Shown one piece after another: positions 597 to 62,200 of a stretch of 64,000 nt of DNA (its first letter is position 1; each line of letters starts with the position of its first letter). Both the position numbers and the translations under genes were made by a program. The DNA is taken from the NCBI GenBank assembly GCA_029953675.1, contig JAMWBK010000013.1, forward strand, positions 558,001 to 622,000, read 5' to 3'. Below the pieces are notes generated by a model, which was given only the letters and a program-made list of their open reading frames with translations, made no database searches and was not told where the DNA came from. The DNA comes from Rhodosorus marinus CCMP1338 (taxonomy: Eukaryota > Plantae > Rhodophyta).

Positions 597-696
597 TCTC
601 AACAAGGCCTCATTTCAACTCGCCAGAAGCGCTTCACTGCGGCACAACCCAATATAAACAAAAATCCTAGTTACCAAGGATATCGCCATCCACTTC

Positions 697-3049: not shown

Positions 3050-4404
3050 CGCACTGTCGACGACGGTGGTGGCGCCGAAAATACATTCTCTAGACACGGG
3101 CTAGAAGTGCGTTCCCGCTCAAGTTTTGCTCAGCATTACAGTATCACCACACGCACCTCGTTTTTTCAACAGAGACGCACTAGACGTGCACGCATATGCC
3201 CCGTTCATCCAAGTCATGCGACTTCATCCACCATAAGCGCTGACCTCCACCCTCGCTTTTGGCAAGCGCTTTCCTACGGAAATCTGGTAGCTTTCACTCG
3301 CCGGACAAGGGAAAGCGGGTAGTGTCGCAAAATGCATGCTTTTACTCAACAACCCACGCTCAGTACTTTCCTTTTTCGGCGGCACCCAGACAAAAACAGT
3401 GCTTGTTGACGAAATCCACCAACTCTAGAGCAATCCTGATTACCCGGAGTCACCTGCCAGCCTACCCAGCGTTTCGAAAGCAGTGGCATGTAGCAAAGTG
3501 ACTCCAATATCCAATTCATCCCCGAACGCAGCTTGCTTTGACAAGATTCCAGTGGAATCCAAAGCCTCAAAGATATCAAGCGAAGAAGCAATCATTAAGA
3601 ATCTACCAGAAGCATATTGATTGTGTTTAAGGGAAATTAACATTGAAACGAATTCCTCCATCCTCCGCAACCACTGTTTAGCAGGAGTTCCAGATTTTGA
3701 ATATATTGGGCATTCTAGGAGAGCTTGTTCCATAAAATCCTCGGATTCAATCTTCGGAAAGCTGCTCTCTTGATTTACACAAAAACGCATCCAAAACAAA
3801 GATCATTAAAACTCGGTTTGCTGGCGTCTCGTATCCGCGAATTGTGGATTTTTCGATGTTTCTTGAAAGGTTGTTTTCAAATATTTCTTCGAACCATTGG
3901 ACTAGGCTCTGGGTCCCTATAGACTATTTTTAATGGTTCTGCTGCTCGCCCACCATTACCAGAGATGAACCTTATAGGGCGAGAGACTAGTGTCAGGTAT
4001 TTTTTTCCAGCTTCAATTCGTTGATTAGTGATCTGTTTAGTCCAACCGCTATCAATAATTCTTCACAAAATTCACCAATCCCATCGTGGAGTGGGGCAAA
4101 AAAACCAGAATCACAACTACTATTGGTTCAAAAACGCACACAGAAAAAAAAATTCTTGTCTGCTAGTGGTGAGTTAGCAACAGAATTTTTAATCTGCTTT
4201 CAGAGAACGGTCCAATCGTTGTAACCCTTCCCCACCTTGGCAATGTTCGATTTTGGAGAAAGTGTATACATCGTAAGGGGTGATATTGAAACCCACCTTT
4301 TGATGACAATATTGATCAATAAATTGTTTTAAACTATAAAATAGCTGAGACTTTGTTTTTCGAGGGGGGGAAACTCCGTTTCCCTCCGCCAATCCAAGCA
4401 TCAT
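3050..4404 (-). CDS. Hypothetical multi-exon gene, frames broken (likely by sequence errors)
   Basis: Protein-like segments MEQALLECPIYSKSGTPAKQWLRRMEEF, LPDFRRKALAKSEGGGQRLWWMKSHDLDERG and QSLVQWFEEIFENN, plus a branch point/acceptor ctaactcaccactag. No continuous frame through the homopolymer-rich 5' part. Confidence 0.35.
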
Positions 4405-4739
4405 AGTGTGTAGTAATCAAAAGCAAGTGAACAGCCGGAATTTTCTACTATGGAAGCATATTCCATTTTGACACATTTGGTTGACATTTGGTCCCTGAGG
4501 GTTGGTGGGAGAAGTTTTTTTCTTCAAAGGGAAAAAAGGACATGTGGACATACGGCATCAAACGACTCTGTTTCGCTTTTGCGTGGTGGAACTTGCGTTT
4601 TGAGCAAAAAGTCTCGTTTTGCTGTTTCTCTGTTACGTATGTGATGGGTGGGGGCCTTTTTTTTGTTTTGGGGGGGGGGGAAGGAGGGTAGGGCAGGTAT
4701 GCACATCCTCTTTGGACGCGAATACAACAAGGTGAAATC

Positions 4740-8019: not shown

Positions 8020-8443
8020 AATGGGGCATGCCCCAAATGAATAATGATAACACTTCGAGGGGTTGCCCTTGGGTTTCGGGCACATTCTGAGCTCGGTGCA
8101 AATCGAGTATGGCGCCATCGCAAACTGGATATATATCTTTATGCTGAACGCCTTGCCTCCTCCCTATCCAAACAACTATAATACAATATTTTGAAGCTTA
8201 TTCGTATAATGCAAATAAATTAAAGCACTATTGAGAAAAACAATTATTGAACTGAAATTCATTATTAACGTTGTGAGGAGTTCACAGGAGAACAGTAGCT
8301 TTTCACAAGGCCTCTCGGCCTGACCAGCTTCTCAACTCCTGTGAGGTACGAACCAAACAAATCGTTTGGGGCAAGAAATGCGGCATCAGAATCTGGACGA
8401 GCTGATTGGAATCGACAAATATGAAGCCAATGGGGCATGCCCC
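8020..8443. repeat. Two copies of a 15-bp word containing the perfect 12-bp palindrome GGGGCATGCCCC
   Basis: aatggggcatgcccc at 8020-8034 and 8429-8443. Confidence 0.9.
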
Positions 8444-9956
8444 CAGACCCGACAGCACCAATTAAATGAATTCATTCAGTAATTCTATTACTCCCTTGCA
8501 ATAAGTGGACATCCGATGTCAATCGTATATTCTATTTACGGGCAAACCACTCTTCGATATTTTTTTTAATATTTAGTGAAATCTGCTTCGATAGTACACG
8601 AAGAACGAGTAGTACGTCGGACGCCGATTGAGAACGAAAAACTTCTTTCTGATTATATATATTTTTCGGCACCAAAGCAGAAAAAAAGTTCCCCCCTTGA
8701 CGAAAGAGGTTTTTTGTTTTCATAGAAGTTTTCGTGTGATTCTGTGTCTCCACGAACCAAAAGATAATTGGAAAATCGAAGTTTGAGGTGGCATTTTATT
8801 GGTTTAGCGGGCTCATCTGCACTTCTGATTAGCCAATATCTATTCTATTTCCTAAAAATGTGGAGGCTTTCAAAAAAGGAACTACAGAGTGCACCTCCGG
8901 CAACTCTTTTTCTCGGCCGAGGGCTTTTAGCTTTCTTGTACTCATCGAAAAGTCTTCTCATAGCATTCAGTCCTCCTTCACACAAGTAGTACAGCAGCCG
9001 TTTCTTAGCAATGTAAAGGTTGTGGGTGAACACCCCAGATATTCTTTTAGAGTAGTGTGATCTATAGAAGAAAACTTTGTCTCTGCCCGAGGGGGGAGTA
9101 AGCCGACAGAGCCGGTTGTGCCTAGAACCCAGGGAATCTTTCAACGTCCTCGATGCACCAAGTAGGCAGCCAGCCTCGCGGGATCACGAATAGGCTATTC
9201 GGTGGTGTTTGCGTTGGCTCTTTAGAGACCCCACCAGAAGCTCTCACTCAAGAGCTACTTAGACGTATCAAAGAATATCCGATAATGAATAAGTCCTCGT
9301 ATCGCCTTCTGGTTCATGCTCCTATCCATCCTCACGTACCCCCCTCTTCCCGTTCTTGTTCGTTGATTGCACCGCCCGATTTGTAGCTGGCAAACCCCCA
9401 CGGGGTTGGAAGATTTTCATCATTTCGTGAGCGAAGAGGAATCTATTTCTTATGGGTCCCCTGCGCTCTTCAGATGCGAGTTGCTTGTTAGAAACAATAT
9501 TATAATTAGAATTGTTTCTTACAAGTTTGTTGGGATGAAACTACTACAGGAGCAAAGCACCGGGGGGTTGGGCGGGATATGATTTCTCGCCAGCCTCCCA
9601 GATGTAAACTGCAGAGGGGTAAATAATCCATCGGTTTTGGACAGAGCGAATATATTCGACTTGCAAAAGGGGTCGGGGCGACCTTGCTTATCCGTCAGTT
9701 TCCGATGGAATTTTTTCTGACGTGAAATGGAGGGGGGGCTGCCTGAGGATGGGCGGCGAGTGCGGGTAGAAGAGAGGCGAGACCGCTGAGGTAAAAGGCT
9801 AGGGGGGTGAGCGAGCGTTGTGCCTTAGGGAAGACGTTGCGTTCCTCAGTTTCTGCGGATGGGACATTTAGCGTTTGGCGAATGAGGTATGATCGTTTCG
9901 TTCGTTTGAGACGGCTGAGCAGGATAGACAATTAGGTTTTTGCTACTGTGAAGAAA

Positions 9957-10969
9957 ATGGGAGCTCAAAGAGTGCTTCAAGTGGCTGATAAGTCGATAAA
10001 AGGAAACTCGCAATGGGTTGCGACGTTGGCCCACGATCCGTCAGGGAGTATGATTGCTACTGGAGGCTGGGACAAGTCCATTCGAATCTTCGATATTGAG
10101 AGCGGCAAGGTGGTTTTGAAGATCAAAGGGAGTCTCTTCACTGGGCACCACGATAGAGTATACGGCCTGCAGTATTCCAAGGATGGTCGCTTGCTCTTAT
10201 CAGCGTCTGGTGACCGAACTGCGAGGGTATGGGACGTTCAGGCGGAAACTTGCGTGAAGAACATGCATGGGCATACCGGGGATGTGAAGAGGGCGATACT
10301 GTCAGAGGACGGCAACATTATTCTTACTGCGTCACGTGATAAGAGCATTAAACTGTGGGATTGGCGAGTGCAAAATCATATCCACTCACTTTCTGATCAG
10401 AGGGGCTGGGTGGAGGACATTGCTCTCTCTCCTGATGGACGGTCTCTCTACTCGGTGGGCGCGAGCGGTTGCATAAAGGTATCTTGTCTCTCAAAGCATC
10501 CGTAGCGAGCACTACAGAGAAACTGAGAAGAGTTGTCCCTCGCGGTTTACAGCTTTGGCAAGATTTCTCTCAATCCAGGGTTGAAACGTTCACTGCCCAC
10601 GATCAAACCATGACTTCTATTGCCGTATCTCCAAGAGGCAGTATGATCGCCACGGCGAGTGAGGATCGCTCTGTGTGCATTTGGGACTCAGCGACGATGG
10701 TAAATACTGCCGTATTAAAGGCCCACGATAACATTGTGTCTTCAGTAGCGTTCAACAGCGATGGTTCACGCCTGGCGTCTGCGTCTTGGGACAATTCGAT
10801 CGAGGTATGGGAGACGAAGTCATACAAGCCTGTTGCAACTATACTGGGCCACAGCGACACGGTTTCCTGTGTTGAGTTTTCTCCCACGAACGATTCCTTG
10901 GCAAGTGGGAGCTGGGACAGAAACGTCAAGGTGTGGGATCTGCCGAGGACCAGCCGGAGCCACCGCTGA
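9957..10969 (+). CDS. WD40-repeat beta-propeller protein (about 7-8 repeats), 2 exons
   Basis: Repeated GH...WD units (TGGWDKSIRIFD, SASGDRTARVWD, TASRDKSIKLWD, TASEDRSVCIWD, SASWDNSIEVWE, SGSWDRNVKVWD). Intron at 10479-10552. Confidence 0.9.
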
Positions 10970-13182: not shown

Positions 13183-15420
13183 TCAGATTAGGCAAGAGGA
13201 CGACTTTCGCCAGTCTTTCCTTTCAAATTCCAACAAACTTCCGGCCGCCTTGTGGACAATTCCAACAGTCAGTAATTCGTCATCCTAAACGCGGACAGAG
13301 AATCACATCCGAAGACAACTAAGTCAAGACACTCCGCTAGACCAAGAGCGGATTGCGCTCCAGTTCACCGCGGAACCTCATCAACGCCCCATGTCGATTG
13401 ACGACGATACTTACCGGGCTGACAGTTATTCCAGACACCAGCCCAAACAAATCTATCTCCTGCTTCCGTTGGAAGTCCATGTCTCCGACAAGATATATGT
13501 ACACATAGTCTGAATTATCGGACATGATTAAAAATTTTCCATCGTTTGTGAACCTGAGACTTCGAATAGCTCCAAAGAAGCCTGGCAAGCATGGTCCTAG
13601 CTGGCGCGCTGGATATCGAACATCCCAAATACTGCGAAAAGGGTACAGTTTGCGCCTGTTAGCAAAACGGGCAGCGATCCAGGCTGACACCCAACTTAGA
13701 GGACACATTTGATACCCACCGACAAGTGTTGTCCTCGTTACCAGTAGCAATTATACTCCCATCTGGGTGCCAAGCTGTGGCAAACATATTTCTAATATGT
13801 CCACGGAGGATTACCTCGGGCTTCCCACTATCTACATCCACGAGCCTGCCATCCTCATGATCCCCGGCTACGCAAAGCAGTTTTCCACCGTTCGGCTGTC
13901 TGGTTGCATGGTTCACCTGCAGATTTGACAAGCGCGAGAGGACGCAAAGCTCAGGTTCCAAGTCCAAGCAAGTACCAAGTAGCGCAAGAAACCTTTTTAG
14001 GAGAGTGAGGCGTGGCCCCCTTACCGCAAATCCCATACGGATAGTATTGAACACTGAGAAGCTTTCCGTGTCGAACATACGGATTTTTCCGTCGTTGTTG
14101 CTAGTCATCATGACCAGCTGGCCTTGAGGGGACCAGTGGCAATCAATAGCATTCGTAATCGGGTCCGAGCGAGTGGATATGTGGTCCGCAAACACGATCG
14201 AGTTTCGATTCAAATCCTTCACTACAACTTCGCCATGAAGCCCACCGGCCATAACCAAATTCTCGATAGCGGCTATCGTTGTAACCGTCATATGTCTTAA
14301 ACCCCTCGATGTTACCTCGGGCGAACACATGTTCAGCACAGAACTTTCTTTCCTCCGCGATGCGTTCCAATGCATAATGCCTGGCCAAACCAAAAGCACC
14401 AGAAATGAGATACGCGATGGTTCGCGCGAAAAGGCAAAATCTCATTGCCGAGGCGATAGCTCGCCACACCCAGTACCCCAACAAAAGACAACTTCTAAAT
14501 ACGTGGTTAACGCAGACTTACTGTTCTTGCACATAGCGTAAACGTCATGTTGAGACGTAGAGACTACCAAATGCCTCAACTGTGTATGACCAATCGAGCA
14601 TGACACCCTCCTCGTGCTGTAGTTGAAACTGAAAAACTCCGCATCTGAGGGAGTAAACCAGGACAGTCGTGGGTGTGCCGTACAGAGGCCAGGAAGGTAA
14701 ACCGACTGTGCATTGTGCATCCTGTAGGTGTCTCTGCATGAAAACCCAAGCATGGCCAGATCAATTCCCTGTGACGGTCATAAGGCAAAGCCACAATGGT
14801 CAGGGGGGAAACACATTAGACAGCGTCAGTGTGCTCAAATGCATGTAATTATCTTTGAAAAGTTAAGCTGTAGTACCTGCATGTCAACTCCGTTCTGATA
14901 ATCTTCCCAGGTAATATCGCCGTGATGCTTGGTCAAGGACGGAATTGACTGGACAAACTCCGTTGATGTCATCGAATTGGCGCAATCGATGGCCATTTGG
15001 TTGTCCTCGGATTCCGTAGCGTCTCCAAAGGTGATAAAGGAGTCCTCCGTACCCTCTGACAGAGAGTCGAAATCAACATTGTCATCGACGACCTTGACGA
15101 CGACGAATTGAGTTGGACAAGAGAAAAAATATATATAAATAAGAAACAGAAACCACACCGCATGGCTTTTCAATTCAATGCCGCGAACTACATACCTCTA
15201 CGTTGTCATCGAACAGGTTTTCATTCGTCACGCGACTAACCAGAAACAGTAGAACAGGCAAATGAGAAGCAAACATCAACAAGCCACACCTACCGCGCCA
15301 AAAAAGGACTGCAATAAAATCACCGCGCCAAGGGAGTCCCAAGCACAAGGCCTCGCGCGGGCAGAAAAAAAAGAAGAGGTCACTCCTTACCTGTACCTCC
15401 CCTCCTGAATACCCACCCAT
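13183..15420 (-). CDS. WD40 protein of the DUF2415 / S. pombe C2A9.03-like family, multi-exon
   Basis: FFSFNYSTRRVSCSIGHTQLRHLVVSTSQHDVY, AGGLHGEV, ITNAI, SNND, VNHA, FATAWHPDG..IATGNEDNTCR, GAIRSLRFTNDGKF, QEIDLFG.VSGI.VSP. The first exon lies in a low-complexity island and is uncertain. Confidence 0.85.
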
Positions 15421-16330
15421 CCTCCAGAGAACTCCATTCCTCCCCCACAATACCCAAGCCCTCTACCCGCCCGCACCCCACCCTTCCCGACCAAACCCGG
15501 TCAACACCCCTTCATCTCCCACACCAAAAAAAACCCAAAAAAACTTATCCCACCGCCATCTTCAAAATCAAACGTAGCTCATATCCGTCCTTATCACCTC
15601 ACAATTACTCAAAAATTCCACGAAAGGATTACCCTCTCCTCCCCTCAGAATCAGTTGTTCAGTACCCCTCATCCTCCTCACTAACCTCTCAACAGGTTAC
15701 ACGAAACTGCTTCCCCCTTCCTTATAAGGCCCCCCACCAAACCACCTTCCTCATCATCAGCCAAAACCAAAAAAAAACTACTCAACTCCCCATCAAGTAC
15801 TCACTATACAAATACTATACCCCCTCCCCCCCCCTCTTTAACTTCAATAATCGTATTGGAAAAACCTAAACTTTAATATTCCACATACCCCCCTCTACTT
15901 TGTAACCCTACCATTGCATCTCAACAAATCTATAAAACCTTAAATTTCATGTCACCACCGTCGACATTATATAAAAAATCTAGATAAGTCATATTTATCT
16001 AGGGGTGAGGTTACTTTTGAATATGACACGGAATTCGAAAAGGTTAGGAACTACTAAAAGGGTTGGGGGTGGTTTTTTCTTGTCTAGTGGTTGAATATGG
16101 AATAGCATTGGTGAACGGAAAAAATGTAAAGGAGGGGGAGGGGGTGTGTGTGGTATAGTATAGTAAATTATGAGTTTTACTGGGTCAGGGTGCATATCTA
16201 AACCAAAATGTGCATGTGCATAATTAACGGGGATATTTTCATAATTAGGAATTATCTAGGTCCCAATCTTTTGAAATGTTTCTATATAAGTAATATTTAG
16301 GTAAATCTGGGGAAGATATTATTCATTATT
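15400..16330. other. Low-complexity skew-switch island (C/A-rich then G/T-rich on +)
   Basis: 15400-15950 is nearly devoid of G with C and A runs. After about 16000 it is G/T-rich with G runs. It lies at the 5' end of the minus-strand WD40 gene. Confidence 0.75.
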
Positions 16331-16339
16331 TGGAAAACT

Positions 16340-18205: not shown

Positions 18206-19214
18206 AGCAACGACATTCCATTAGGAACTCAACACCAAACAACCCTCCCACGACAGCCCCTGTTCAGGCCAAGCGTCCACCCGAATTGACTTTGACTTCA
18301 ACAAACACGCCTGGAACAGATGGCCGGCCAGTTTTATAGCTCCTAGCGATGTTGAACGCTTGTTCAACACGTCTCCTACAAACCCACCGACTACGACCAG
18401 ACCAGAATAGCTTGCATCAATTCGCAAGTCCTTTTTACAATAAATCCTCATTACAAGAAGGAAACAAGAATTCGGAACTGCTCAGAGCTTCCTCTGAAGG
18501 CTGCTTGTACGCCTAAAGCGTGAGCTTTGTATACTGAACACCAGCATCATCTCTACGACAGTCTGAATGTCCTAAGATGCTTAAGAATTTTTGATCACTC
18601 GGTAGGCCTGAAAGCGAGAAGCATGATTCTTTCGGTGCAAGCTTGGCCCACCCCTTCCAGGTCGTTCTCGGATCTGGGTTCGCATTTGAAAAACTAAGTG
18701 GTTATCAGAGCGTGTTTCGTCTAGACGTCATGGGCTGAGTAGCGAGGTTCGCCTTCCCCTATCCCTGCGCTAAGCTTTAAGATTCCTCGAAGCCAGCGCG
18801 GCAAGAAAGTTTGGGCAATGTGCAACACACTTCTATACCTGTAATGTAATATTGTGTATCAACGCAGCGACACCGGTTTCTTTATACATACACGATCGTC
18901 CTGGGCGAAAATACCAACTGGAGGTTTGGTGTGGTTTTCAAGAACATTAAAAAGACTTCGATGAACTAATTATGAATTCCAAGCTATTAAACAGGAGAAT
19001 TTAGTAGGATTGTTCCGCGGCGCAAGCGCTCGTTTCGACATTACAAGTGTGCCTCGAGTTGACATTTGTTTCTGTGCCTCGTCGCACGTCTATTTCTTTC
19101 GAGTCACTCATCCGTGGACCTTACAAAAACTGCGAGCACTCTCGAGAAGTTAACTTTGGGAAAATGAATTACAGCATGAGGCGCTCGTGTGGTAGAGACA
19201 GTAGGGAGCTTGAG

Positions 19215-25332: not shown

Positions 25333-25847
25333 CCTTCTTCGTACGCAGAAAAAAAAACAAACCTAATTCAGCTCTTCCCTCCGAAAAACAGCCAGGCTCT
25401 ATTGCATCAGTTTATGCCACTCCAACCCGGGGCAAACCACAGTTCTCACAAATCAATCCATTCAAAGATCACGATTGATAGCCTTCAATCCTCGCGAAAC
25501 ATCGGCTATACCAATCCGAATGCTCCCACCCATGCTCTCGCACGCACATCGCTCGAGTCCATCTCCCCCGATAATAGCTTCACCAGCCCAGCGCCTAGAG
25601 AAAATTGAGGTACCAAAACGACCGACCCGGAACTTTGTCACCCTGAAACATTCAGCCGAAAAAAAACACGTTTCAGTGATTGTCGGAAGTACGCTTCAGG
25701 GTTATATCCGATCGAACCTGCTCACCCTGAAGCTTGCTGATGTGGAACTTAAGTTTTACCCTTTTGACCTGGCCCAGATTTGTTGTCGGTAGTATGGCTT
25801 TGGGACCTGGGACCGTGGAGCAGTGTTTCCCGAGTAGGCAGTATACA

Positions 25848-32359: not shown

Positions 32360-33750
32360 TTTTTTTTTAATAGGCAAATGCGAGAAGATCGCGTGATTCG
32401 TGGAAGATCGTAGAAAATGTCAAGCAGACAACAAAAGCGAAAAACACAATTACAATTATTTCCCAAAAAACGTAGTTGGTTATCAAATTTATCCCAAAAA
32501 TCAACGAATCAATTGTAAGTAACTCAAAAATTAACCACAAAAAAAACACCAAGCGGCATTATGAGAGGAAGCAAAAAAAAAGGTGGCCTGTAGATGCTAG
32601 GTGGACAAACAACGTTTATCGAGAGTTCTTCCTCCCCCGCCCGGAATTCCGCGTTTCTTAGAAATTTCATTAGCCAATCACTATAGACGACAGGTGTCCA
32701 TCTTCAAAAATAAATACAAATTAGAATATGAAGAACTTTGGAATTATGTATATTTAAATTTTTTTCAACTACGGAACGCAAAAACCAAAAAAGGCTTTCC
32801 TCCCCTCCTCCTCTCCCCCTCCTCCTCCCCCTACCCCGCGGTGCGGGGCAGGAAGGGGGTGGAGATTCCAACCGTCCGCGGGAAGAGGGGGGGTGGGGGA
32901 CGGGGAGGGAGGGAAATTGCCCATGAGGATAACAAACTATTCATAGAACCGGGGCTAGAATGTTAAAGATTTATACTATTTTCGGAAGTTTTATTCTCTT
33001 CTTCGATGGCTTTTGGCTGTTTCGTGTCGTCTGAATTTTTTTTGAAAGGGACAAATTGTTAAATTGTTTTGTACATTAATTGGTGATTTTGTTCTCATAG
33101 TTCTCGTTGTGTATTGTTTGCTACGTTTGTTGTTGCTATATAGAAAAGTTTGTTTTCTATGTGTTTTTTGGGGGGGTGGCGAATTGGGACGTTTTTCGGT
33201 GTGTATGTGTGTGTGTGTTTTTAATGTGTTTTTTGGGGGGGTGCGGGTGTGTATTCTTTGTTTCCCAGTGTCGCTCTTGTATCGTATCGAGCGTGGAAAG
33301 GCGATAGTATATGTTGCAGTTAAAGAATTGTTTGGAAGGTCGCGAGGGAGGGTTACTGTCTCTCCCCGCCGAGTCAAGTTTAGTTAGCCATGTACGAGAG
33401 CACGGGCTAGTCTGGTGAGAGTACCCGTATGGGATTGTGTGATGTGCTGAGGGTGGTGGCTTTCTGAGACTGGCAAAGTGGGGTGTTTGATAAAGAAGAG
33501 CGTATTGGATTGATAGTGCATCGCCCTTAGTGTGGATTGGCGCGAGCGTTGTGCGGTTGCTTAGGCTTGTTGTCTTGGTTTCTGGGAGGGAAACGCGGGG
33601 ACAACCGCGTGCATTTGCTTTGCTGGGGTTGGAGGTGTGGTGCTTGTGGAGGGGTTGGGGCTGCATGTGGGGATACCAAATTTGAGGTTCTCTTTATGTA
33701 GGATCGGGAAGATGAATGTCGTGTAACGAGATACCGTTGCCGGCATTGAG
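32360..33750. other. Low-complexity skew-switch island upstream of the C2H2 gene
   Basis: A/C-rich to about 32835, then G/T-rich including (GT)n near 33205 and G runs. Confidence 0.75.
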
Positions 33751-33753
33751 TAG

Positions 33754-37465: not shown

Positions 37466-37774
37466 CCTCTGCAAACCCACAACAGTGCAAAACCACTTCT
37501 CACTTTAAGCAACCAGATTCCTCACCCTTCTTCCCCTTTCTTATTGACCAAAACACCGTTTCTCACCCCTTCAATGGCAGACCTCGGCAACACCATGAAT
37601 TCAGCAAACTGGTTTTTCGTCCCATTCCTCAACTCATCGAACCGAAATCTTCCAACGGGCCTTCTCGACCGCCATACTACCTATATATATAAAAACTAGA
37701 GATGCATTCAACTGGTCAAACTAGTTCATCCCCAACAGTTTCGCCCTACAAGTTGACATCCTAGCCAAACCTTA

Positions 37775-37797
37775 TACACACACACACACACACACAC
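37775..37797. repeat. (CA)n microsatellite within a C/A-rich island upstream of PLC
   Basis: atacacacacacacacacacacaccc. Confidence 0.85.
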
Positions 37798-38899
37798 CCG
37801 CTACAGACACCCTCGAAAAACTTGGCAATAGCCAACCATGAGCAGTACCCGTTGGATATCAATCCACACTGCTCCGATTCTAACAGTATCTCCAATCTCA
37901 CAACAAACCTTTTTCCAAAGAAACGATGACGATATATGCAACAAACACGAAGCAGGTGATGCTTAAAGCTATTCGCCGATCCTGGAGAACCACGGTACCG
38001 ATAGGAAATTTGCTTTTCAACCCCGAAAATAGTTTTTTTCTTATAGTACGATTTACAAGCCGAATATAGTTTGAATTTAACTGTCACAGAGTGGGCGAGA
38101 ACCATAAGTCGCGCTTACAGTTGGTTGGGACAGGCTGTTCGTTGTTCTGCGCCCACATTTTCTGCCGGTTGGAGGACCAGCTGTGGCGACCTGGGCTACC
38201 GACTTTGCGAGTGGGTTCTGGACGTAGGGGTGTCGTGTATTTCGCAGTGTCGGTAAGTGAATGATGCTGCATCGTAGATGAGGGTTCAAGGGAAAGATCC
38301 AGACTGCCAACAATGTCGGCTCCCTTGATCTAGCCAGCTCTTCCGAATAGCGAGCTGTGTGAGCCAACATTGCGGTTTGCTTGTCTGGCATCTTGCGCGA
38401 GCTCTTGATGCTGCCGCGAATTGATCGGATGGCAAGTTTCACTAAGAAACTGTGAAAACGTCACCGTGTGCATCGAAGGACCATCTCCGGCAGGTGATGG
38501 AGTATGAATTCCTTCTTCAGATGAGTTTCAGTAGCGAAAGAGATGAAAATACGGGGGCTTTGTCTTCCCCAGGCATTCGTGCTTCGGCTCTAGCTCATCA
38601 GGCTATGTTTAGTAAAACCGCCATGTTAGTAAAACCACCACTCATTAGGCTTTCAGTTTCGACGGGCGCCTGTAGCAAGGAGCCGTCTCTCGCAACGGTT
38701 GTAGGTTAACAGTTTCTCATTCAGATCGGTAGGTTTCTCTTCACGGGGCCTGTTCAGTAACGGAATGCATCGATAATTCTTCTGTAGGTCCCCTACAAAC
38801 ACACCTGCCCATCCAGAATCCTCATTGGGGAACCGGTTCCCTGCTCTGCACTGCACTGGTTGGTTGCCCTTTCAAAACCGGAAAATGTTCAATTCTTGG

Positions 38900-40020
38900 A
38901 GATATTTTTTAAACCAATAAATGTCCACTATTCCGCTCCATACTCGACGCAAGCCAATAAAGACAAGCTTACATGAAATTCAGGCCAATAGAATATCAAG
39001 ATATGCTTACATGATATCCAGGCCAATAGCATATCAATACCTCGATAATTCTTCAAAAATATCCAGTTTAATTGTGGACACCTTTCGAAATTATAGCCAA
39101 TTAATATCCGCGATCTCTACCGCGATCTATGGAAAATTAATTTATTTTCATTATTCAATTTTATTTCCTGCCATTCTCTGAAAGCAAATTCAATCTGAAA
39201 CTTCAGTCCGCTTCTGTTGATATCAAAGCCTCTGAAAACAATGACCCCCTATTCGAATTCGACCAATCCAGACAGCACCAATGTAGAAATCCCGAGTTTA
39301 CCCCTAAGCAAATGTGAGCGTCAAAAGAGTCAATCGAATATTCCATGGGTGCGAATTCCCACTAAAACCTCAAAAATACCTATAAATTTATTCAGCAGAC
39401 GAATCCTATTTTTTTTACAGTCAGGTATCTATACCCTCGAATCCCTGAAGTTCCATCGAATATCCCTGACAGTATATCACCCACCGTCTCTACAATAGCT
39501 CAACGAGCAACAAAAAGAAATATAGCTTAGGGGGGGGGGGGTATATTCGCGCTGGAGTCATCAAAGTATCAACCACGCCAAAACAAATACAATATATCAA
39601 AAGGGGTGGAAAACTTAATTGAAAAACATATACTGACGTCTGTTTTGAGGTTTTGAGGGGGTTTTAGACATAGCAGCCCGGCAGCTGTTGCCATTAACTG
39701 CTGCTGGTGATGGCGGCTGGCTGGGTTGGGGGTGTCAACTGTTTTTGGGGAAGGAAAATGTGCCTGTTTTTTGGACTTTTTGGTTTGAGTATATATAGAA
39801 ACGAGTTTTTAGGGGGATTGTTGTGAGGGGAACTTTTAAGGTTGGGAGGGTGGGGAAGGTGTGTGGATGATTTGGGGTTGGTAGGGAGGCTTCTGAATAG
39901 GTATGTAGGAAGATTTGTTGGTGAGGGAGAATTTGGGAAGTGGTTTGGGTTTTGGTGGTTATCGTTGTGTTGTGAGGAGGGTTGTTTGATTCTCTTTGTG
40001 TTTTGTTGTTAGCTGTGTTG
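38900..40020. other. Low-complexity skew-switch island upstream of the choline kinase gene
   Basis: A/C/T-rich at 38900-39600, then strongly G/T-rich and C-poor at 39640-40020. Confidence 0.75.
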
Positions 40021-40027
40021 GTACAAT

Positions 40028-44400: not shown

Positions 44401-44484
44401 AAAACGTACTGCTTCATTCCATTTTAAACCATTCTCAGTCATCATCCGATCTCTTTCCAAACACTCACAATCCTCAGAGGCCAC
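41446..44484 (-). CDS. ASH2L: COMPASS subunit ASH2L/Bre2/TRAUCO-like: winged-helix-like N-terminus, multi-exon linker, SPRY domain
   Basis: SPRY: KGYRSVRA.YG...GDWYYEVEI, ARIG, APAGSDKHSWS.RD..G..FHQARG..Y...F..GDVIG, FFKNG, YYPTLSLY...VRINFGPDF. The N-terminal LKWNEAVRFVL..L resembles the ASH2L winged helix. These are joined through seven short phase-0 exons read manually. Confidence 0.85.
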
Positions 44485-45554
44485 AATCCAGAACCGCGTC
44501 CTCTCCGAATGCCAAACCGAAAGAGTAAGATCAGCGCCAAAGCGAATGCTCCTTCAGCCTTGTTCCTATTCTTGTCTATTCCTGTCAATGGAAAACGAAA
44601 TTACCTAGCCGGTCACTTCGGCTCTAGTGAGCCTCTTCTACTTTCCACTTTGCCAAGACTAAGATCAGAACCTAACCATCACAAGCTCTCTGGTCATCCG
44701 AAATGCCTTCGTCTTCATCAAAGGGACGATGGGAAAGACACTTCAGCGTCGTAGGCACGGCAGGTTGCTTTATGTATTCGATGGTAGAGCGACCGCTCTT
44801 GGGATCTAGTCCATGTCAAAAAGCTTCACATCGATGACCTCATACTAGAGCAAGTTAGCATGGACGATGCTCTGAAGCAGTATCCTCGCCAGCGTTAGCT
44901 CTTCCGAGTCTTTTTTGGACCATAGGGGGAGGGAAGGCATGTCGTCTAAAAAGATGTGTGGATGCTGGAGGGTTGGTTGACCTCGGGCATACTAGAATTC
45001 TGAGATTTGGCGCTGATCTGCATGTTCTTGGAACACCACAAAGGCCCTGATCCTCTCTGCGTGTGGTTTATGGATTTCTTGTCCCCACTTCGAGTGCGCC
45101 ATGTAGAGCTAGTGGTCGGCAAACTCTGCCGTTTGTAAGAAGCAGATGTCACCCCTGAACGCACGCTCTAGGTGCTGCTGATGATGACCGAAGGATAAGC
45201 AAAGGTGTAAAACTTCAAACCTCCTGCGGGCGCTCGAATCAAAAGGGAAAAGCACATCCCGAACACGATACCTCTTTGCCCAGACTTATGCGCTTTCTCG
45301 CGACCGGCATTGCATAATTTAATAAAGTTGATGTCTGCAGCTGAGTGAGGCACCTCGCATCGTAGGCACATGCTACGTTAGACTGCACTACAGGCTGAAA
45401 GGCAGGGTTATGCAAACGTCCGTGACCTGAGGTCTAAAAAACTGCCGAGCAGCTTTGCAACAACCCTGGCTTTGTCTGAGAGACAGCGGGAAGCGCTTGG
45501 ACCGGAACATGGATGGAGGAAATCTTGGCGCACCAACCAGCAGAAGGAGTTGGA

Positions 45555-49229: not shown

Positions 49230-49239
49230 GGAAAACAGC

Positions 49240-50300
49240 AGGATCCTTACAAACTATACGTCCTGGTCACCACCGCTCAGAAGCGTTCCTACCACCACCC
49301 GTCGACGCCTGCCACCCCCGCACCGCAACCCTCTGCCTTAAACCTCTACCTCCACAGCACAAAATCACCGTCCAGCTGCTTCAACTACTGCCCCCCCTCC
49401 CCTTCCCAAAACAGATACTCAGAAGAGCCGATCGGCAGACTACAGCTCCGCCCTTTCTACCTTATCAAACGCCTCTCCCCACTTTATATTTTGTCGAAAA
49501 GCCTCTTTCCCTTCCTCTCACCACCCACAGAGTAGACTCTACTACACCAACCCCACCCCCGATACCCCCCCAAAAAAAAACAAAGAAAACAATGCCAAGT
49601 CAAAAGAACCCAAAAAATATCCGAAACAATAACAGAAATTTAATATATATATATTTCTATTCTGCTCAAGAAATTGTCTGAAAACCTCAAAATTGTATTC
49701 AATAATTTTTTTTGTAAAATAGAAATGTTTCTTTGACTCAGTGGGGGTTGGGACTTGTCCAGCTCTCTTTACAAGCGCTATCGAACACGGCCAATAGGGT
49801 CAATCTGATCTTTTTTCTGTTGAAACTTATTGAATACTCGATTTCACTTTTAGAATAACTAATTAAAAGAAAACAACGAAGAAAAACTAACCTGGGAGAA
49901 ATATTTAACTCTAAATTATAAAACACTATGAACAATTGAGAAACAGAAAATCTAATACGTCATAAATCTATATTTTTCAGTTTACGTTCCGCCTCCCCAA
50001 CGGTGTAACCTTCCCACCCCTCTTTGGTTCCATATATCAACATATTTGCTCATATTTTTATCCATTAAATGATAACTTGGTTCTTACCGTGACTTTCAGG
50101 GCAGGTCATGGAGGTCATGTTGAAAAAGGACAGCTGTAGGATATTTATTTCAGTGGTAGAGGTTAACCACTGGCGAGTAGTTTATCCTTTTTTTCTTTTG
50201 TTTTTGACAGAAAACCAGATATTTTCAAATTCAACGGTGAATATACGTCATATGGGTTCTGGAAATCCTTAGGGTATATTCAGTATGTAAATTCTTTTTA
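49240..50300. other. Low-complexity island upstream of Alba (C/A-rich, then AT-rich and G/T-leaning)
   Basis: G-poor C/A runs at 49250-49640 followed by AT-rich homopolymer tracts. Confidence 0.65.
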
Positions 50301-54449: not shown

Positions 54450-55490
54450 TAAACTTCTTCCAAAAATTAGCTTACACTAAAACAATATATTATGTTCGTG
54501 AACCGAGTTTATTCTAGAACAATGAGGATCTAATCTACGTCTCTTCCACCAAATAAGAACAGAATTATATGAAATATTAGGATAGATTAGAAAACTGTTC
54601 CAAATTAACGACACATCAGCTGAGCTATTCCATGGCCAGCTTATGTCAAGCTCTATCTTAACCGTCTACACGATAGATTATTCCACAAGAACCTCATAGC
54701 CGCGTGAGATGAACCCCTCTCCGAATAGGAGCAATGATTGTTTAGCTCTCTTATCCTAGGGGGTGCTTGAAAATCCAAGTTCCTCAAATAGTTTTCCATT
54801 ATACAATAAACTGTGATTCCACGCAAGGTTTACCAAAGGACTTACGAGCGAGATAATTCGGCAAAATGCCGAAAAGGAAAAGGGGGGGTTCTGGAATCAT
54901 GAATTCGTATCGGTGAGATCCAGTCGCTAAGCTGCTGAGGAAAATATCTCGACTGATTGCACTGTATTAAAAAACGCCAAACCTCTGTATCGTTTATTCT
55001 ATAACCTGTATATAATTTTTTGTCCAAACTTTCCATTCTTCTTATACACATTTCACTCGGATTACAGAATAATATGATAGATACCATATGTAAAACGATC
55101 TTTCCAATGGGAATCCATATAGGAGCCATCAAACCCCCCAAAAAGTGACGAAAAGGGGAATTAAGATGAAATCGGAAGAGAAAACGTTGAAATTGCTTCA
55201 CATTTTTCTTGAGGGATTTCTCTTCTTGTTGGGCTTCTGGATGTGGTGGGCAACGCGATGTTTCAGTAGGTTTGTGAGTTTTATAATGGGGCAGCTGTTG
55301 GGAGGGTTGGAGAGCGGGGGAGGGGGGTGATTTTTTGTTTGGTCTGTTTTGTGGATTGTCTTGTATATTTGGTTTCGTGTAGATTCTGGTATTTGGGAGC
55401 TAAGTTTGTGTCGAGGTGTTTTTTAGCATAGTAGGGGGGAGAGGTTCGGGCGCTGTCGATTACTTTTTTTTTTGGTGAGCTTTTGAAGAG
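54450..55490. other. Low-complexity skew-switch island upstream of Snf7
   Basis: A/C-leaning to about 55145, then G/T-rich with G tracts (55296-55330) up to the ATG. Confidence 0.7.
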
Positions 55491-55496
55491 GGATAC

Positions 55497-56537: not shown

Positions 56538-57661
56538 CCGTTTAAAGTAATACAACGCCTCCTTTTTTTTGTTTCGGCTTTTGCCTGCAACCACCTAACT
56601 CCGAGCTTCTCTGCAGAGCATGACCTTGACCATGGTCGCATGTTCTGCTGCCTGAACTTCTCTTTTTGGAAGGAGGGAGCACCATCTAGACAGCCGCGTG
56701 AATACGACCCTTTTGAGGGGAAGCAGCGGAATCAAATACCTCCTGAATAAGAGGGAAAAGCTAGCCAGAGACGCATCAGAAATCAAACTCTTCGTTGTGC
56801 GGGCAGGTTGTAGAGCAACTCCATTTCCGAGCCTCTGTAGACTTTGAAAGGCTAGTCGAAGAGATGCCAAGTCCACCCTGCGCTGACTAGCTGCGTGTTC
56901 CCGAGACAGAGCGTCATGGTCAGCAGAAGAGAAGGACCCAACCCCGAGTACATAGAGCAGTATCTTTTCGCTCTACAGGAGCTACGCAAGCAGCTTTCTC
57001 CGCCGCAGTTGCAGCAAACTTTGCTTCCCTTCCAGTCCCGCTGCTGCTGCCCCCAAGGGATTCCGCACCGCATGAAAAACAAAAACGCCAACCAGTCGGT
57101 CGGATCGGAAAACGTGGAATACCCAAAAATCGCTAGGTTGACCTTTAGATCGCGAGGCCTACTGATAACGCATTATCGAGTCAAACAAGAGCCAACTCAC
57201 CGCAAGTCAATCAGACCGAGCTGCTGAAAAATTTGTCGAAGAGCTCAGAAGCATTCGCGTACTACTCTCCACAGAGAGAGTAGCACACCAGCGATTTGTA
57301 GTACATTTTAAACCAACCCTGAAGAGAACTTTTTCGTCCTATCTACGACCGTAGAGCTGAGATGTTCGGAATGAGAGGGTAGGATCGGTTGTATGCTGAG
57401 TAAAGTTCTGGGGGACAGACATGCCTTTGGATTGAACGGAATGGAATGAGTTGTTTTTTTCTTGTATTTGTATTTACGTTCATAGGAGAATGGGAGCTGT
57501 AGGATTCTCGGTAGCATCTGCAGACTGAAAGGGGGGCAGAGAAGCCTTGAGTTGACTTGGGTGTGGATTTATATTTTCGAGCTGAGCTGGAGGCAGGAGG
57601 CAGGCGGCGGGTTGTTCTGTTTTGGGAGGGGTTTTGGATCTTGGGATAGGCTTGATTTGGA

Positions 57662-61602: not shown

Positions 61603-62200
61603 CACGGCATATTTCCATCAGCACCAAAATCTCCTTCACACCAAGAACAGACTCACCTTCGCTTCAGGGATCGAGCCAAAAATATCCGCAACACAAAACA
61701 AAACCAAAAGCCCTAGCTTGAGGTTGTTACAACCCCTCCCCCCCGCCCACCTCCCCCACCAGTCCTTGCTTCCTCCCTATCAATCCCAGCTCTTAACGAC
61801 AATAATACTTTCACGGCATGACGTCGCAACTCCAACAAAAAAAATCCAAAAAAGTGTTCAATTTATTTGATAAGAAGATAAATCTGAGAATGGAGTTCAA
61901 CGTCACGACGTATGCACTTTAGCGTCTTACATCGAGACGTCTTAACCTGCTTCTGTTTAGGGAAAATAGGACTCGATATTCTTTCAACAAAACAATATAT
62001 ATCCGTTGAGATTTATTTGGCCAATGTTCAGCAGCAGCATATCTGAGACGGAAAAGGCATTGGATTTGTAGAGATTCTATCCCGTGTGGAAAAAAATTGC
62101 AAATGGGTTGAAATTTTGTGGCAATTATTTCTGGATTTGAGAAAATTGCAAATCTTGAGGTGATACGGTAAGGGGGTTCATGCTTTCCCACTTCGTTGGG
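61600..62200. other. Low-complexity skew-switch island upstream of KNL2
   Basis: C/A-rich at 61600-61870, then A/T- and G/T-rich to about 62200. Confidence 0.65.

What the first reader, a model, noticed from the sequence alone, without database searches (positions are those of the whole stretch)
15400..16330. Recurrent skew-switch islands at gene 5' ends (type example; repeated across the window)
Roughly every 3-10 kb the ordinary mixed sequence gives way to a 0.3-1.5 kb homopolymer-rich island: about 4100-4735, 7950-8760, 15400-16330, 29950-31050, 32360-33750, 37480-37830, 38900-40020, 49240-50300, 54450-55490, 57400-57660, 61600-62200 and 63400-64000. Upstream of minus-strand genes (WD40, PLC, Alba, KNL2) the + strand is C/A-rich. 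Upstream of plus-strand genes (SDR-B, C2H2, choline kinase, Snf7, PRELI) it is G/T-rich. The larger islands flip C/A to G/T at a central point, so the sense strand is always C-poor. Two readings are possible. Either these are real bidirectional-promoter or replication-origin elements with R-loop/G4-type skew, or they are long-read miscalls concentrated at promoters, which would itself flag a dense promoter DNA modification (for example 6mA or an unknown base) in this lineage.
Basis: partly seen in the sequence, partly recalled or inferred. Interest (0 to 1): 0.72.

Follow-up and report, generated by a model that had tools for sequence, protein, structure and literature searches.

The report
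Strand-skewed promoter and leader regions, red alga
The "islands" are real promoter and 5'-leader regions of genes in the red alga Rhodosorus marinus, where the coding strand is strongly G/T-rich and C-poor around each transcription start; this is an unusually strong, apparently unreported case of a known kind of strand bias, not a sequencing artefact.

Summary
The window is Rhodosorus marinus CCMP1338 nuclear DNA (GCA_029953675.1, contig JAMWBK010000013.1), from a nanopore assembly polished with Illumina reads.

- 58 of 639 200-nt windows have |GC skew| > 0.35, against 0.6 in dinucleotide shuffles.
- The 12 listed islands cover 15% of the window but hold 56% of homopolymers of 6 or more bases.
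- In the 300 nt upstream of 17 start codons, sense-strand GC skew averages +0.38. Two of these genes lie outside the window.

**What the islands are.**
- Illumina transcript contigs of a related strain show the skewed DNA is largely 5' UTR (149, 288 and 597 nt) plus about 150 bp upstream.
- The skew continues into coding sequence at third codon positions: +0.51, +0.37, +0.22, then about 0 beyond 270 nt. It is positive in 14 of 14 genes.
- It is absent from introns, later coding sequence and 3' flanks.
- Flips occur where two outward-facing domains abut.

**Verdict.** These are TSS-anchored strand-asymmetry domains. They have the mammalian sign (G>C), opposite to plants and fungi, and carry no CpG-island character. 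They are about twice as strong as published means.
- The artefact/modification reading is not supported.
- The replication-origin reading has no support.
- The cause, strand-biased mutation or selection for G-rich non-template DNA prone to R-loops and G-quadruplexes (G4), is unresolved.

The parts
15230..15980 (-). Type example, left half. G/T-rich (sense) promoter-proximal and leader domain of the minus-strand WD40 gene. Sense composition over 15300-15980 is G 256, C 59, T 222, A 144, giving GC skew +0.63.
   Evidence: G4 motif at 15442-15498. R-loop-rule matches at 15266-15520 and 15700-15834, both on the minus strand.
15309..15390 (-). Probable 82-nt intron in the 5' leader of the WD40 gene (CAG|GTAAGG ... 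TTGCAG|). Inferred only.
   Evidence: Read. Size and splice signals match the introns solved.
13662..15092 (-). WD40-repeat gene served by the left half. Homology-supported coding runs 13662-14753, with a probable upstream coding exon at 14877-15092. The start codon is uncertain (between 14753 and 15224).
   Evidence: tblastn of the related-strain protein P0003. Pfam WD40. Coding potential. Sequence reading.
15920..16002 (.). A+T-rich core at the flip point (15981). It has TATA-like words on both strands and an 8-bp-arm palindrome, CTAGATAA-N7-TTATCTAG, at 15980-16002.
   Evidence: The roles of the TATA-like words and the palindrome are inferred, not tested.
15981..16330 (+). Type example, right half. 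G-rich on the + strand (GC skew +0.51), with G-blocks at 16061-16079 and 16125-16155. No plus-strand gene was found downstream, so this is an 'orphan' half.
   Evidence: No + strand coding signal in 16000-19000.
4237..4739 (+). Skewed leader/promoter of the Rossmann-fold gene 'SDR-B' (ATG at 4740).
   Evidence: G4 motif at 4670-4693. R-loop-rule match at 4670-4823.
9550..9957 (+). Skewed leader/promoter of a plus-strand WD40 gene (ATG at 9958).
25333..25600 (-). Skewed leader of the Aquarius-like gene.
32838..33753 (+). Skewed domain of the C2H2 zinc-finger gene. At least 33203-33753 is 5' UTR; the related strain's UTR is 597 nt.
32360..32837 (-). Left (C/A-rich) half of the same island, including a polypyrimidine tract at 32797-32841. 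The partner minus-strand gene was not identified.
37466..37815 (-). Skewed domain of the phospholipase C gene. The 5' UTR is 37466-37743. TATAAG lies at 37776-37771, 33 nt upstream of the transcript end. A (GT)11 tract lies at 37776-37797.
39505..40027 (+). Skewed leader/promoter of the choline kinase gene (GC skew +0.56).
38900..39504 (-). C-rich 'orphan' half of the choline kinase island. There is no annotated minus-strand partner.
44446..44600 (-). Skewed leader of the SPRY-domain gene. The skew continues into its first exon.
49230..50089 (-). Skewed leader/promoter of the Alba gene (GC skew +0.40 on the sense strand).
55140..55496 (+). Skewed leader/promoter of the Snf7 gene (+0.58).
57400..57661 (+). 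One-sided skewed leader of the PRELI gene (+0.52). It lies in tandem after Snf7 and has no C-rich half.
61603..61848 (-). Skewed domain of the KNL2/SANTA gene. The 5' UTR runs from 61603 to about 61740. A G-run block at 61727-61766 spans the transcript's 5' end and the first ~25 nt upstream of it.
63522..64000 (+). Start of the skewed leader of the aldehyde dehydrogenase gene. Its ATG is at 64389, just beyond the window.

Best explanation
**What it is.** Each island is the promoter-proximal part of one or two RNA polymerase II genes of Rhodosorus marinus. It comprises roughly 150 bp of core promoter, the whole 5' UTR (about 150-600+ nt, sometimes with an intron) and the first 200-270 nt of coding sequence. 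Across this domain the non-template (sense) strand is G- and T-rich and C-poor, and is full of G-runs and T-runs.

**Why it flips.** Where two genes or transcripts diverge, two such domains lie back to back around an A+T-rich core. The + strand therefore flips from C/A-rich to G/T-rich. Tandem genes have one-sided islands.

**How it most likely arises (inferred).** I favour a DNA-level, position-dependent process anchored on the transcription start. The non-template strand is repeatedly single-stranded there (open complex, early or paused elongation, R-loops). Strand-biased mutation or repair, seen on the sense strand as C-to-T and A-to-G, would then drive it toward G+T. The resulting G-clusters make the region more prone to R-loops and G4 structures and less favourable to nucleosomes, which may reinforce the effect.

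**My split on cause:** mutation-driven about 45%; composition-level selection for G-rich non-template or nucleosome-excluding promoter DNA about 35%; other about 20%.

**Shown:** the location, the orientation rule, transcription of the islands, the gradient at synonymous sites, and the absence of the skew elsewhere in genes.

**Inferred:** the mutational or selective cause, and any R-loop or G4 formation.
For: **Identity of the sequence**
- The window is identical to GCA_029953675.1 contig JAMWBK010000013.1, positions 558001-622000.

**Skew upstream of start codons**
- Sense-strand GC skew upstream of 17 ATGs is +0.44 (-100 to 0), +0.40, +0.30, +0.12, then about 0.
- The 300-nt mean is 0.385. 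No mean of 17 random windows exceeded 0.21 in 100,000 draws.

**Transcript evidence**
- Related-strain Illumina transcript contigs map 5' UTRs onto the islands. KNL2 has 149 nt, PLC 288 nt and C2H2 597 nt, with GC skew +0.32 to +0.40 there and +0.44 to +0.49 in the window.
- A TATAAG lies 33 nt upstream of the PLC transcript end.
- The skew is equally strong (+0.47 to +0.53) in the 150 nt upstream of the transcript ends. It fades between 150 and 300 nt upstream.

**Gradient into coding sequence**
- Third-codon-position GC skew is +0.51, +0.37, +0.22 and +0.04 for nt 0-90, 90-180, 180-270 and 270-360.
- It is positive in 14 of 14 genes and higher early than late in 12 of 12.

**Absence elsewhere in genes**
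- Introns +0.01, overall third positions +0.05, 3' flanks +0.03.

**No discrete motif and no sequence conservation**
- Enriched 6-mers are a G/T compositional family with no single motif.
- 5' UTR identity between strains is 0.80-0.81 plus indels. That is about the same as third positions (0.80-0.86), yet the skew is kept in both strains.

**Structure-forming potential**
- 14 G4 motifs against 0.75 expected. A simplified R-loop-forming-sequence rule gives 10 matches against 0.05 expected. All the R-loop matches, and all the G4 motifs that can be assigned to a gene, lie on that gene's sense strand.
Against: - No transcript or TSS data from this strain were available. The TSS positions are 5' ends of de novo contigs from a strain with about 80-88% identity, for three genes only.
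- The skew upstream of those ends is not explained by transcription-coupled mutation unless start sites are dispersed.
- G is enriched more (+0.13) than T (+0.04), so cytosine deamination alone cannot account for it.
- Two-sequence comparisons cannot polarise substitutions, so no mutational asymmetry was actually measured.
- Four of 17 genes show weak upstream skew.
- Several flipped halves have no identifiable partner gene (15981-16330, 38900-39504, 50089-50300, 61848-62200).
- My gene starts in the left 35 kb come from my own ORF and homology models, not from the deposited annotation.
Confidence: 0.8

Rival explanations
1. Selection on the mRNA leader. C-poor, G/U-rich 5' UTRs and early coding regions would be favoured because they keep the start-codon region unstructured or bind a translation factor. 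The DNA skew would then be a by-product of RNA-level selection.
For: - The skew peaks between -200 and +100 of the ATG.
- It is strongest at synonymous sites in the first 90 nt of coding sequence.
- The islands are largely transcribed 5' UTR.
Against: - Predicted folding energy of -150..+30 is -45.6 kcal/mol. De-skewed controls of the same G+C give -46.8 and internal coding windows give -47.6 (Wilcoxon p = 0.85). The skew therefore does not reduce predicted structure.
- The skew is just as strong in the 150 nt upstream of the transcript 5' ends.
- It persists to about 270 nt into coding sequence.
- G-runs in leaders would favour RNA G-quadruplexes, which generally hinder scanning (established knowledge, not tested here).
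- UTR sequence is no more conserved than synonymous sites.
Confidence: 0.12
2. The islands are replication origins. The C/A-to-G/T switch would be the leading/lagging-strand skew jump, as at bacterial origins and as proposed for human CpG islands.
For: - The sign is right. Moving away from the flip, the strand read 5'-3' is G/T-rich, as on bacterial leading strands.
- Human CpG-island promoters have been proposed as origins of bidirectional strand asymmetry (PMC2817419).
Against: - The skew decays within about 300-700 nt instead of extending to a terminus. Introns, late third positions and 3' flanks are unskewed.
- Tandem genes have one-sided islands (PRELI and Snf7).
- Every domain is co-oriented with a gene start, including genes only 1-3 kb apart.
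- A spacing of 3-10 kb equals gene spacing (31 Mb with 8,392 genes).
Confidence: 0.04
3. Assembly or base-calling artefact. Nanopore homopolymer miscalls would be concentrated at promoters because of a dense DNA modification (6mA or an unknown base).
For: - The genome was assembled from Oxford Nanopore reads.
- The islands are homopolymer-rich.
Against: - Contigs were polished three times with Pilon using Illumina HiSeq reads.
- Illumina-only transcript contigs of a related strain show the same skew and identical G7 runs in both UTR and coding sequence.
- The skew runs through uninterrupted reading frames at third codon positions in 14 of 14 genes.
- Two distant homologues show the same 5' skew: a JGI transcript contig and a Logan contig whose sequencing technology I could not check.
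Confidence: 0.02
4. Oriented binding sites. The G-run blocks (GGGGAGGGG / GGGGTGGGG type) and T-tracts would be discrete, strand-specific promoter elements. These could be sites for a G-box or zinc-finger factor, or directional nucleosome-excluding tracts. The bulk skew would then be the sum of such sites.
For: - G-rich 20-mers cluster in islands and are co-oriented with genes.
- A G-block lies at and just upstream of the KNL2 transcript end.
- Sense-strand T and G runs outnumber A and C runs 68 to 8.
Against: - No single enriched word stands out. The top 6-mers are a broad G/T family present in 8-12 of 16 genes.
- Block positions relative to the ATG vary from -30 to -900.
- The skew extends over third codon positions, where binding sites are not expected.
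- PLC has a (GT)n tract and a TATA box instead of G-blocks.
Confidence: 0.15

Closest known systems
GC-skewed CpG-island promoters of mammals (co-oriented G>C skew downstream of the TSS, forming R-loops; Ginno et al. 2013, PMC3787257)
   Same: - G>C on the non-template strand, starting at the promoter and running into the 5' part of the gene.
- Co-oriented with transcription.
- Divergent promoters give a C-to-G switch.
- G-clusters satisfy G4 and R-loop sequence rules.
   Different: - No CpG or G+C enrichment. The islands have lower G+C (0.42 against 0.50) and lower CpG observed/expected (0.77 against 0.92) than their surroundings.
- The domain is shorter (about 0.4-0.9 kb).
- T>A accompanies G>C in the non-coding part.
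- R-loops and methylation state were not tested.
C>G skew around transcription starts of plants and filamentous fungi (Fujimori et al. 2005, PMC555766; McLean and Tirosh 2011, PMC3315797)
   Same: - A sharp, gene-oriented GC-skew peak at the TSS/5' UTR that affects most genes.
- It extends into promoters and synonymous sites.
- It cannot be explained by protein coding.
   Different: - The sign is opposite. In plants and fungi the coding strand is C-rich.
- The mean here is +0.4 to +0.5. Published species means at transcript 5' ends are at most 0.22 in either direction.
- No compensating opposite skew was seen at 3' ends.
Transcription-associated strand asymmetry (G+T excess on the coding strand of mammalian genes; Green et al. 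2003 and Polak and Arndt 2008, as cited; abstracts not read here)
   Same: The direction of both skews (G>C and T>A on the non-template strand) and a 5'-end emphasis.
   Different: - In mammals the asymmetry is weak and extends through introns.
- Here it is very strong, confined to the first few hundred nt, and absent from introns.
Plasmodium falciparum and Cryptosporidium 5' transcript ends (G>C; mean -0.19 and -0.12 by the paper's C-minus-G convention; Table 1 of PMC555766)
   Same: Unicellular eukaryotes with G>C at the 5' ends of transcripts.
   Different: - They were only measured as a mean over the first 100 nt of EST assemblies.
- The magnitude is less than half of that seen here.
- Those genomes are very A+T-rich.

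Membership tests
TSS-anchored GC-skew domains (general class) | The skew is co-oriented with the direction of transcription of the adjacent gene. | tested here: met
   16 of 17 genes are positive in the 100 nt before the ATG. Mean is +0.44. p < 1e-5 against random windows.
TSS-anchored GC-skew domains (general class) | The peak lies at the TSS/5' UTR and decays into the gene. | tested here: met
   5' UTRs mapped by related-strain transcripts lie inside the skew. The pooled profile peaks at -200..0 and falls to about +0.1 by +150. The TSSs are proxies for three genes only.
TSS-anchored GC-skew domains (general class) | The skew affects synonymous sites, so it is not a consequence of protein coding. 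| tested here: met
   The third-position gradient is +0.51, +0.37, +0.22, +0.04. It is positive in 14 of 14 genes.
Mammalian-type GC-skewed CpG-island promoter | G>C on the non-template strand downstream of the TSS. | tested here: met
Mammalian-type GC-skewed CpG-island promoter | Elevated G+C and CpG observed/expected (a CpG island). | tested here: not met
   G+C is 0.418 inside against 0.499 outside. CpG observed/expected is 0.77 inside against 0.92 outside.
Mammalian-type GC-skewed CpG-island promoter | R-loop formation and protection from DNA methylation. | not testable with these tools
   Only sequence rules could be applied. There were 10 R-loop-forming-sequence matches against 0.05 expected, all co-oriented with the gene.
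Plant/fungal C-skew (pyrimidine patch, CT-box) promoters | C>G (pyrimidine-rich) on the coding strand at the TSS. | tested here: not met
   The sign is opposite. C is 0.13-0.14 and G is 0.33-0.39 on the sense strand at -200..0.
Replication-origin skew switch | The skew extends from the switch over the whole replicon, regardless of gene features. | tested here: not met
   Introns +0.01, late third positions +0.03 to +0.05, 3' flanks +0.03. Tandem genes have one-sided islands.
Replication-origin skew switch | Replication initiates at the switch point. | not testable with these tools
   No replication data are available.
Long-read homopolymer artefact | The feature is not reproduced by short-read data, and frameshifts occur at homopolymers in genes. 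| tested here: not met
   The assembly was Pilon-polished. G7 runs are identical in Illumina transcripts. Reading frames are intact through skewed coding starts.
Promoter 6mA clusters (early-diverging fungi, Chlamydomonas) | N6-methyladenine at ApT around transcription starts. | not testable with these tools
   Base modification cannot be read from an assembled sequence.

The most novel reading that the evidence does not exclude
In Rhodosorus, and perhaps more widely in stylonematophycean or other red algae, nearly every polymerase II promoter would be a compact, non-CpG 'keto-skew' domain. Its G-run/T-run non-template strand would be functionally required. It would act as an R-loop/G4-prone, nucleosome-excluding, intrinsically bidirectional start zone, playing the role CpG islands play in vertebrates. 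The 'orphan' halves would mark a large set of unannotated divergent transcripts. Two distant PLC homologues from other organisms with the same 5' skew hint that the trait is older than the genus.
Probability: 0.25. Interest if true: 0.6.

Novelty: new member of a known kind. Interest (0 to 1): 0.38.

Why it matters
**Why it is of interest**
- Strand skew at transcription starts is known, with opposite signs in different kingdoms, and its cause is still debated.
- A red alga that carries the 'mammalian' sign, at about twice the strength reported for any species mean, without CpG islands and in a compact 31-Mb genome, gives a clean system. It separates the skew from CpG-island biology.
- It also allows a test of whether the skew comes from strand-biased mutation at the promoter-proximal bubble or from selection for R-loop/G4-prone promoter DNA.

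**Practical uses**
- The skew is strong enough to serve as a TSS and strand predictor for red-algal annotation.
- It already points to probable mis-annotated starts, 5' UTR introns and unannotated divergent transcripts in this window.

**Limit.** It does not indicate a new DNA base or a new class of element.

Tried and rejected
**Searches that failed**
They sought related-strain transcripts of the WD40 gene next to the type island and of choline kinase. The 5' leader of the type example is therefore inferred, not seen.
Gene starts in the left 35 kb rest on my own codon-usage scan, Pfam hits and homology.
- SRR22824290, the source run of L007, is not mentioned in any searchable paper, so its organism is unknown.

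**Negative results**
- Rfam and tRNA scans found no RNA genes that could explain 'orphan' halves.
- A search for a plus-strand gene right of the type island found none.
- The 'unstructured leader' idea was rejected because predicted folding energies equal those of de-skewed controls.
- A discrete promoter motif was rejected after k-mer enrichment gave only a compositional G/T family.
- Microsatellites explain only a small part of the islands.

**Methods that were limited**
- The substitution spectrum between the two strains could not be polarised.
- The first version of the intron solver timed out. The second gave exact models only for PRELI and KNL2, so only 17 short, well-formed introns were used.
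- No report of TSS skew in red algae was found in the paper library. That is absence of evidence within that library only.


Full report
**Source of the sequence**

A 660-aa ORF at 59194-61176 (-) matched a Rhodosorus marinus SANTA-domain protein at 98% identity. The encoding record overlaps the window base for base: GCA_029953675.1, contig JAMWBK010000013.1, positions 558001-622000. R. marinus is a unicellular red alga of the class Stylonematophyceae.

The genome paper (PMC10250338) describes strain CCMP1338. It was sequenced with Oxford Nanopore reads, assembled with NextDenovo and polished three times with Pilon using Illumina HiSeq reads. The assembly is 31.2 Mb with 8,392 genes and 24,821 introns.

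Yes.
- In the type example the + strand has GC skew -0.68 over 15301-16000 and +0.57 over 16001-16300. The cumulative-skew minimum is at 15981.
- Across the window, 58 of 639 200-nt windows exceed |0.35|. Dinucleotide-preserving shuffles give a mean of 0.6 and a maximum of 2.
- The twelve listed islands are 15.5% of the window. They hold 80 of 143 homopolymers of 6 or more bases (22 expected, p = 1e-28). Their G+C is lower, 0.418 against 0.499.
- Seven of the larger islands flip from C-rich to G-rich at an internal point.

- 7950-8760 is A+T-rich but not skewed.
- Skewed 5' regions at 9601-10000, 25301-25600, 31901-32200 and 44201-44600 were missed.
- The left half of the type example begins near 15230, not 15400.

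**Relation to genes**

Deposited CDS ranges were recovered for the right 28 kb and for 7.6 kb beyond the window.

| Gene | Range | Strand |
|---|---|---|
| PLC | up to 37465 | - |
| Choline kinase | 40028-41071 | + |
| SPRY | 41446-44445 | - |
| FGGY | 45555-46844 | - |
| Alba | 47651-49229 | - |
| AMP-binding | 52602-54137 | + |
| Snf7 | 55497-56537 | + |
| PRELI | 57662-58293 | + |
| KNL2/SANTA | 58986-61602 | - |
| Aldehyde dehydrogenase | 64389-66183 | + |
| GMC oxidoreductase | 67098-69908 | - |

For the left 35 kb I used Pfam hits, a codon-usage scan and homology.

Results for 17 genes:
- Sense-strand GC skew upstream of the ATG is +0.44, +0.40, +0.30 and +0.12 in successive 100-nt bins, and about 0 beyond 400 nt.
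- The 300-nt mean is 0.385. Random 300-nt windows have SD 0.19, and no mean of 17 random windows exceeded 0.21 in 100,000 draws.
- TA skew is +0.11 to +0.19 over the same 400 nt.
- Pooled sense-strand composition at -200..0 is G 0.33-0.39, C 0.13-0.14, T 0.26-0.32 and A 0.20-0.21. Further upstream all four bases are about 0.22-0.28.
- Sense-strand runs of 5 or more bases within 400 nt upstream are T 37, G 31, A 6, C 2.

FGGY, AMP-binding and cyclophilin are weak exceptions.

**Are the islands transcribed?**

Protein searches returned orthologues from a related Rhodosorus strain, 80-88% identical at protein level. They are encoded on Illumina transcript contigs in JGI sample 3300017118.

| Contig | Gene | 5' UTR in related strain | Maps to window | Notes |
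|---|---|---|---|---|
| L003 | KNL2 | 149 nt | 61603 to about 61740 | |
| L004 | PLC | 288 nt | 37466-37743 | TATAAG at 37776-37771, 33 nt upstream of its end |
| L004 (other end) | C2H2 | 597 nt | about 33203-33753 | The contig merges the convergent C2H2 mRNA |

- These UTRs are skewed in both strains: +0.44 to +0.49 in the window and +0.32 to +0.40 in the relative.
- The 150 nt upstream of the three transcript ends are equally skewed (+0.47 to +0.53). The next 150 nt are much less so (+0.03 to +0.29).
- The length of the skewed stretch tracks UTR length.

In the type example, the main WD40 coding region is 13662-14753 (-). It is preceded by a probable coding exon at 14877-15092 and a probable 82-nt leader intron at 15309-15390. 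The 750-nt skewed stretch 15230-15980 is therefore best read as a long, intron-containing leader plus core promoter. TATA-like words lie near 15935-15975. This reading is an inference. Both scans for a related transcript failed.

**How far does the skew reach?**

- Third-codon-position GC skew is +0.51 in nt 0-90 of coding sequence, +0.37 in 90-180, +0.22 in 180-270 and +0.03 to +0.05 afterwards.
- It is positive in 14 of 14 genes (p = 1.2e-4) and higher early than late in all 12 genes with paired data (p = 4.9e-4). This includes the genes with little upstream skew, which suggests the domain is anchored on the TSS rather than on the ATG.
- Seventeen short, well-formed introns have GC skew +0.01 (TA +0.19). 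Overall third positions are +0.05 and 3' flanks +0.03.

The feature is therefore a position-dependent domain running from roughly -150 to +350..+700 of the transcription start. It is indifferent to whether the DNA is promoter, UTR or coding sequence.

**Tests that bear on mechanism**

1. *RNA structure.* The predicted folding energy of -150..+30 is -45.6 kcal/mol. De-skewed controls with the same G+C give -46.8 and internal coding windows give -47.6 (p = 0.85). The skew does not make leaders less structured.
2. *Motifs.* Enriched 6-mers (GGAGGG, GGGTTG, GGTTGG, GTTTTG, TGTGTG and others) form a compositional family with no single positioned motif. Tandem repeats cover little of the islands.
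3. *Conservation.* 5' UTR identity between strains is 0.80-0.81 with many indels. Third codon positions are 0.80-0.86. The sequence drifts at about the synonymous rate while the composition is kept.
4. *Structure-prone DNA.* There are 14 canonical G4 motifs against 0.75 expected. A simplified R-loop-forming-sequence rule gives 10 matches against 0.05 expected. All the R-loop matches, and all the G4 motifs that can be assigned to a gene, lie on that gene's sense strand.
5. *CpG.* Observed/expected is lower inside the islands (0.77) than outside (0.92).

**Interpretation**

These results point to a DNA-level process anchored on the promoter. They argue against RNA- or protein-level selection.

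Two explanations remain, and they may act together:
- Strand-biased mutation or repair where the non-template strand is recurrently unpaired. On the sense strand this would appear as C-to-T and A-to-G. G rises more than T, so deamination alone is insufficient.
- Composition-level selection for G-rich, T-tract-bearing non-template DNA that favours open, R-loop/G4-prone, nucleosome-poor promoters.

I put the first at about 45% and the second at about 35%. Nothing here measures mutation rates, R-loops or chromatin.

- *Promoter reading:* supported.
- *Replication-origin reading:* it has the right sign but the wrong range. The skew disappears within a few hundred nt, is one-sided at tandem genes such as PRELI, and follows each gene.
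- *Artefact/modification reading:* contradicted on four counts:
  - Illumina polishing of the assembly.
  - Identical G7 runs and equal skew in Illumina-only transcripts.
  - Intact reading frames through the skewed coding starts.
  - The same 5' skew in two distant PLC homologues from other organisms. L006, from JGI 3300016877, is 77% identical to Purpureofilum PLC. L007, from Logan SRR22824290, has +0.48 to +0.57 over its 400 nt upstream and third-position skew of +0.65 early against -0.17 late. These are single genes from unidentified organisms, so they are only a hint of breadth.

**Comparison with what is known**

GC skew at transcription starts is established.
- It is C>G in plants and filamentous fungi (PMC555766; PMC3315797).
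- It is G>C in mammals, where it marks R-loop-forming CpG-island promoters (PMC3787257).
- In Table 1 of PMC555766, species means at transcript 5' ends range from 0.22 (C-rich) to -0.19 (G-rich, Plasmodium falciparum), using that paper's C-minus-G convention.

Rhodosorus has the mammalian/Plasmodium sign, opposite to the land plants that share the Archaeplastida with it. Its mean of 0.4-0.5 is about twice any of those values. It fails the CpG-island criterion. It also differs from mammalian transcription-coupled asymmetry in being absent from introns.

Full-text searches found no description of this in red algae.

I therefore class it as a new member of a known kind. It is real, strong, taxonomically unexpected in sign, and useful for annotation. 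It is not a new type of element.

**Open points**

- Several flipped halves have no detectable partner gene. They may mark unannotated divergent transcripts.
- Skewed windows at 501-800, 18101-18300, 42401-42700 and 50701-51000 are not at known 5' ends.
- Start sites are known only by proxy, for three genes.

Noticed in passing
window 15981-16330, 38900-39504, 50089-50300, 61848-62200: 'Orphan' halves of flipped islands. They are G-rich on the strand pointing away from the known gene, but no annotated or detectable coding gene lies downstream. They may mark unannotated divergent or non-coding transcripts, or intrinsically bidirectional promoters.
   Followed up: partly
window 1165-1326: A perfect tandem duplication of an 81-bp unit (2.0 copies, 100% identical).
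   Followed up: no
window 38960-39037: A 38-bp unit repeated 2.1 times (87% identical) inside the C-rich half of the choline kinase island.
   Followed up: no
window 15980-16002: An 8-bp-arm palindrome, CTAGATAA-N7-TTATCTAG, lies exactly at the skew flip of the type example and is flanked by TATA-like words on both strands. A match this short could be chance.
   Followed up: no
window 5900-9500: About 3.6 kb with no ORF of 120 or more aa and almost no coding-potential signal, including the unskewed A+T-rich island 7950-8760. The + strand is A-rich at 7200-8000 (AT skew +0.25 to +0.32).
   Followed up: partly
window 33233-37743; locus L004: A single related-strain transcript contig spans the PLC mRNA (-) and the convergent C2H2 mRNA (+). 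This implies overlapping 3' ends around 34.3-35.1 kb.
   Followed up: partly
window 40028-41071, 33754-34326, 27953-28783: Possible annotation issues. The deposited choline kinase model is 295 aa with introns, although the ORF is an uninterrupted 347 aa. The 190-aa C2H2 ORF and the 276-aa cyclophilin ORF are not on record as products.
   Followed up: partly
window 1662-2771 and 4740-5873: Two tandem plus-strand paralogues with a Rossmann-type N-terminus (NLLIVGxGxLG...). No Pfam family reached E <= 0.01 for the two exons of the downstream copy that were scanned (4692-5129, 5436-5873); the upstream copy's Rossmann region was only partly scanned.
   Followed up: partly
5' UTR alignments: window 61603-61740, 37466-37743, 33203-33753 against L003/L004: G<->T differences are the most frequent class between the two strains in 5' UTRs (49 of 185, ahead of either transition class). 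This may just reflect the G/T-rich composition, or it may reflect a G-to-T-type (oxidative) mutational input.
   Followed up: no
window 501-800, 18101-18300, 42401-42700, 50701-51000: Strongly skewed 200-nt windows that are not at a known gene start. 42401-42700 lies inside the SPRY gene, spanning a G-rich exon end and intron.
   Followed up: no
loci L006 (JGI 3300016877) and L007 (Logan SRR22824290): Distant PLC homologues (43-47% identical) from other, unidentified organisms show the same G>C skew in the leader and early third positions. The trait may therefore be wider than Rhodosorus.
   Followed up: partly
window 32073-32089, 39530-39541, 32797-32841: Extreme tracts: a C17 run, a G12 run and a 45-nt polypyrimidine (TCC/CCCCT) tract. 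The polypyrimidine tract abuts a polypurine G-block at 32838-32916, giving an arrangement capable of forming mirror-repeat or hairpin structures at a flip point.
   Followed up: no
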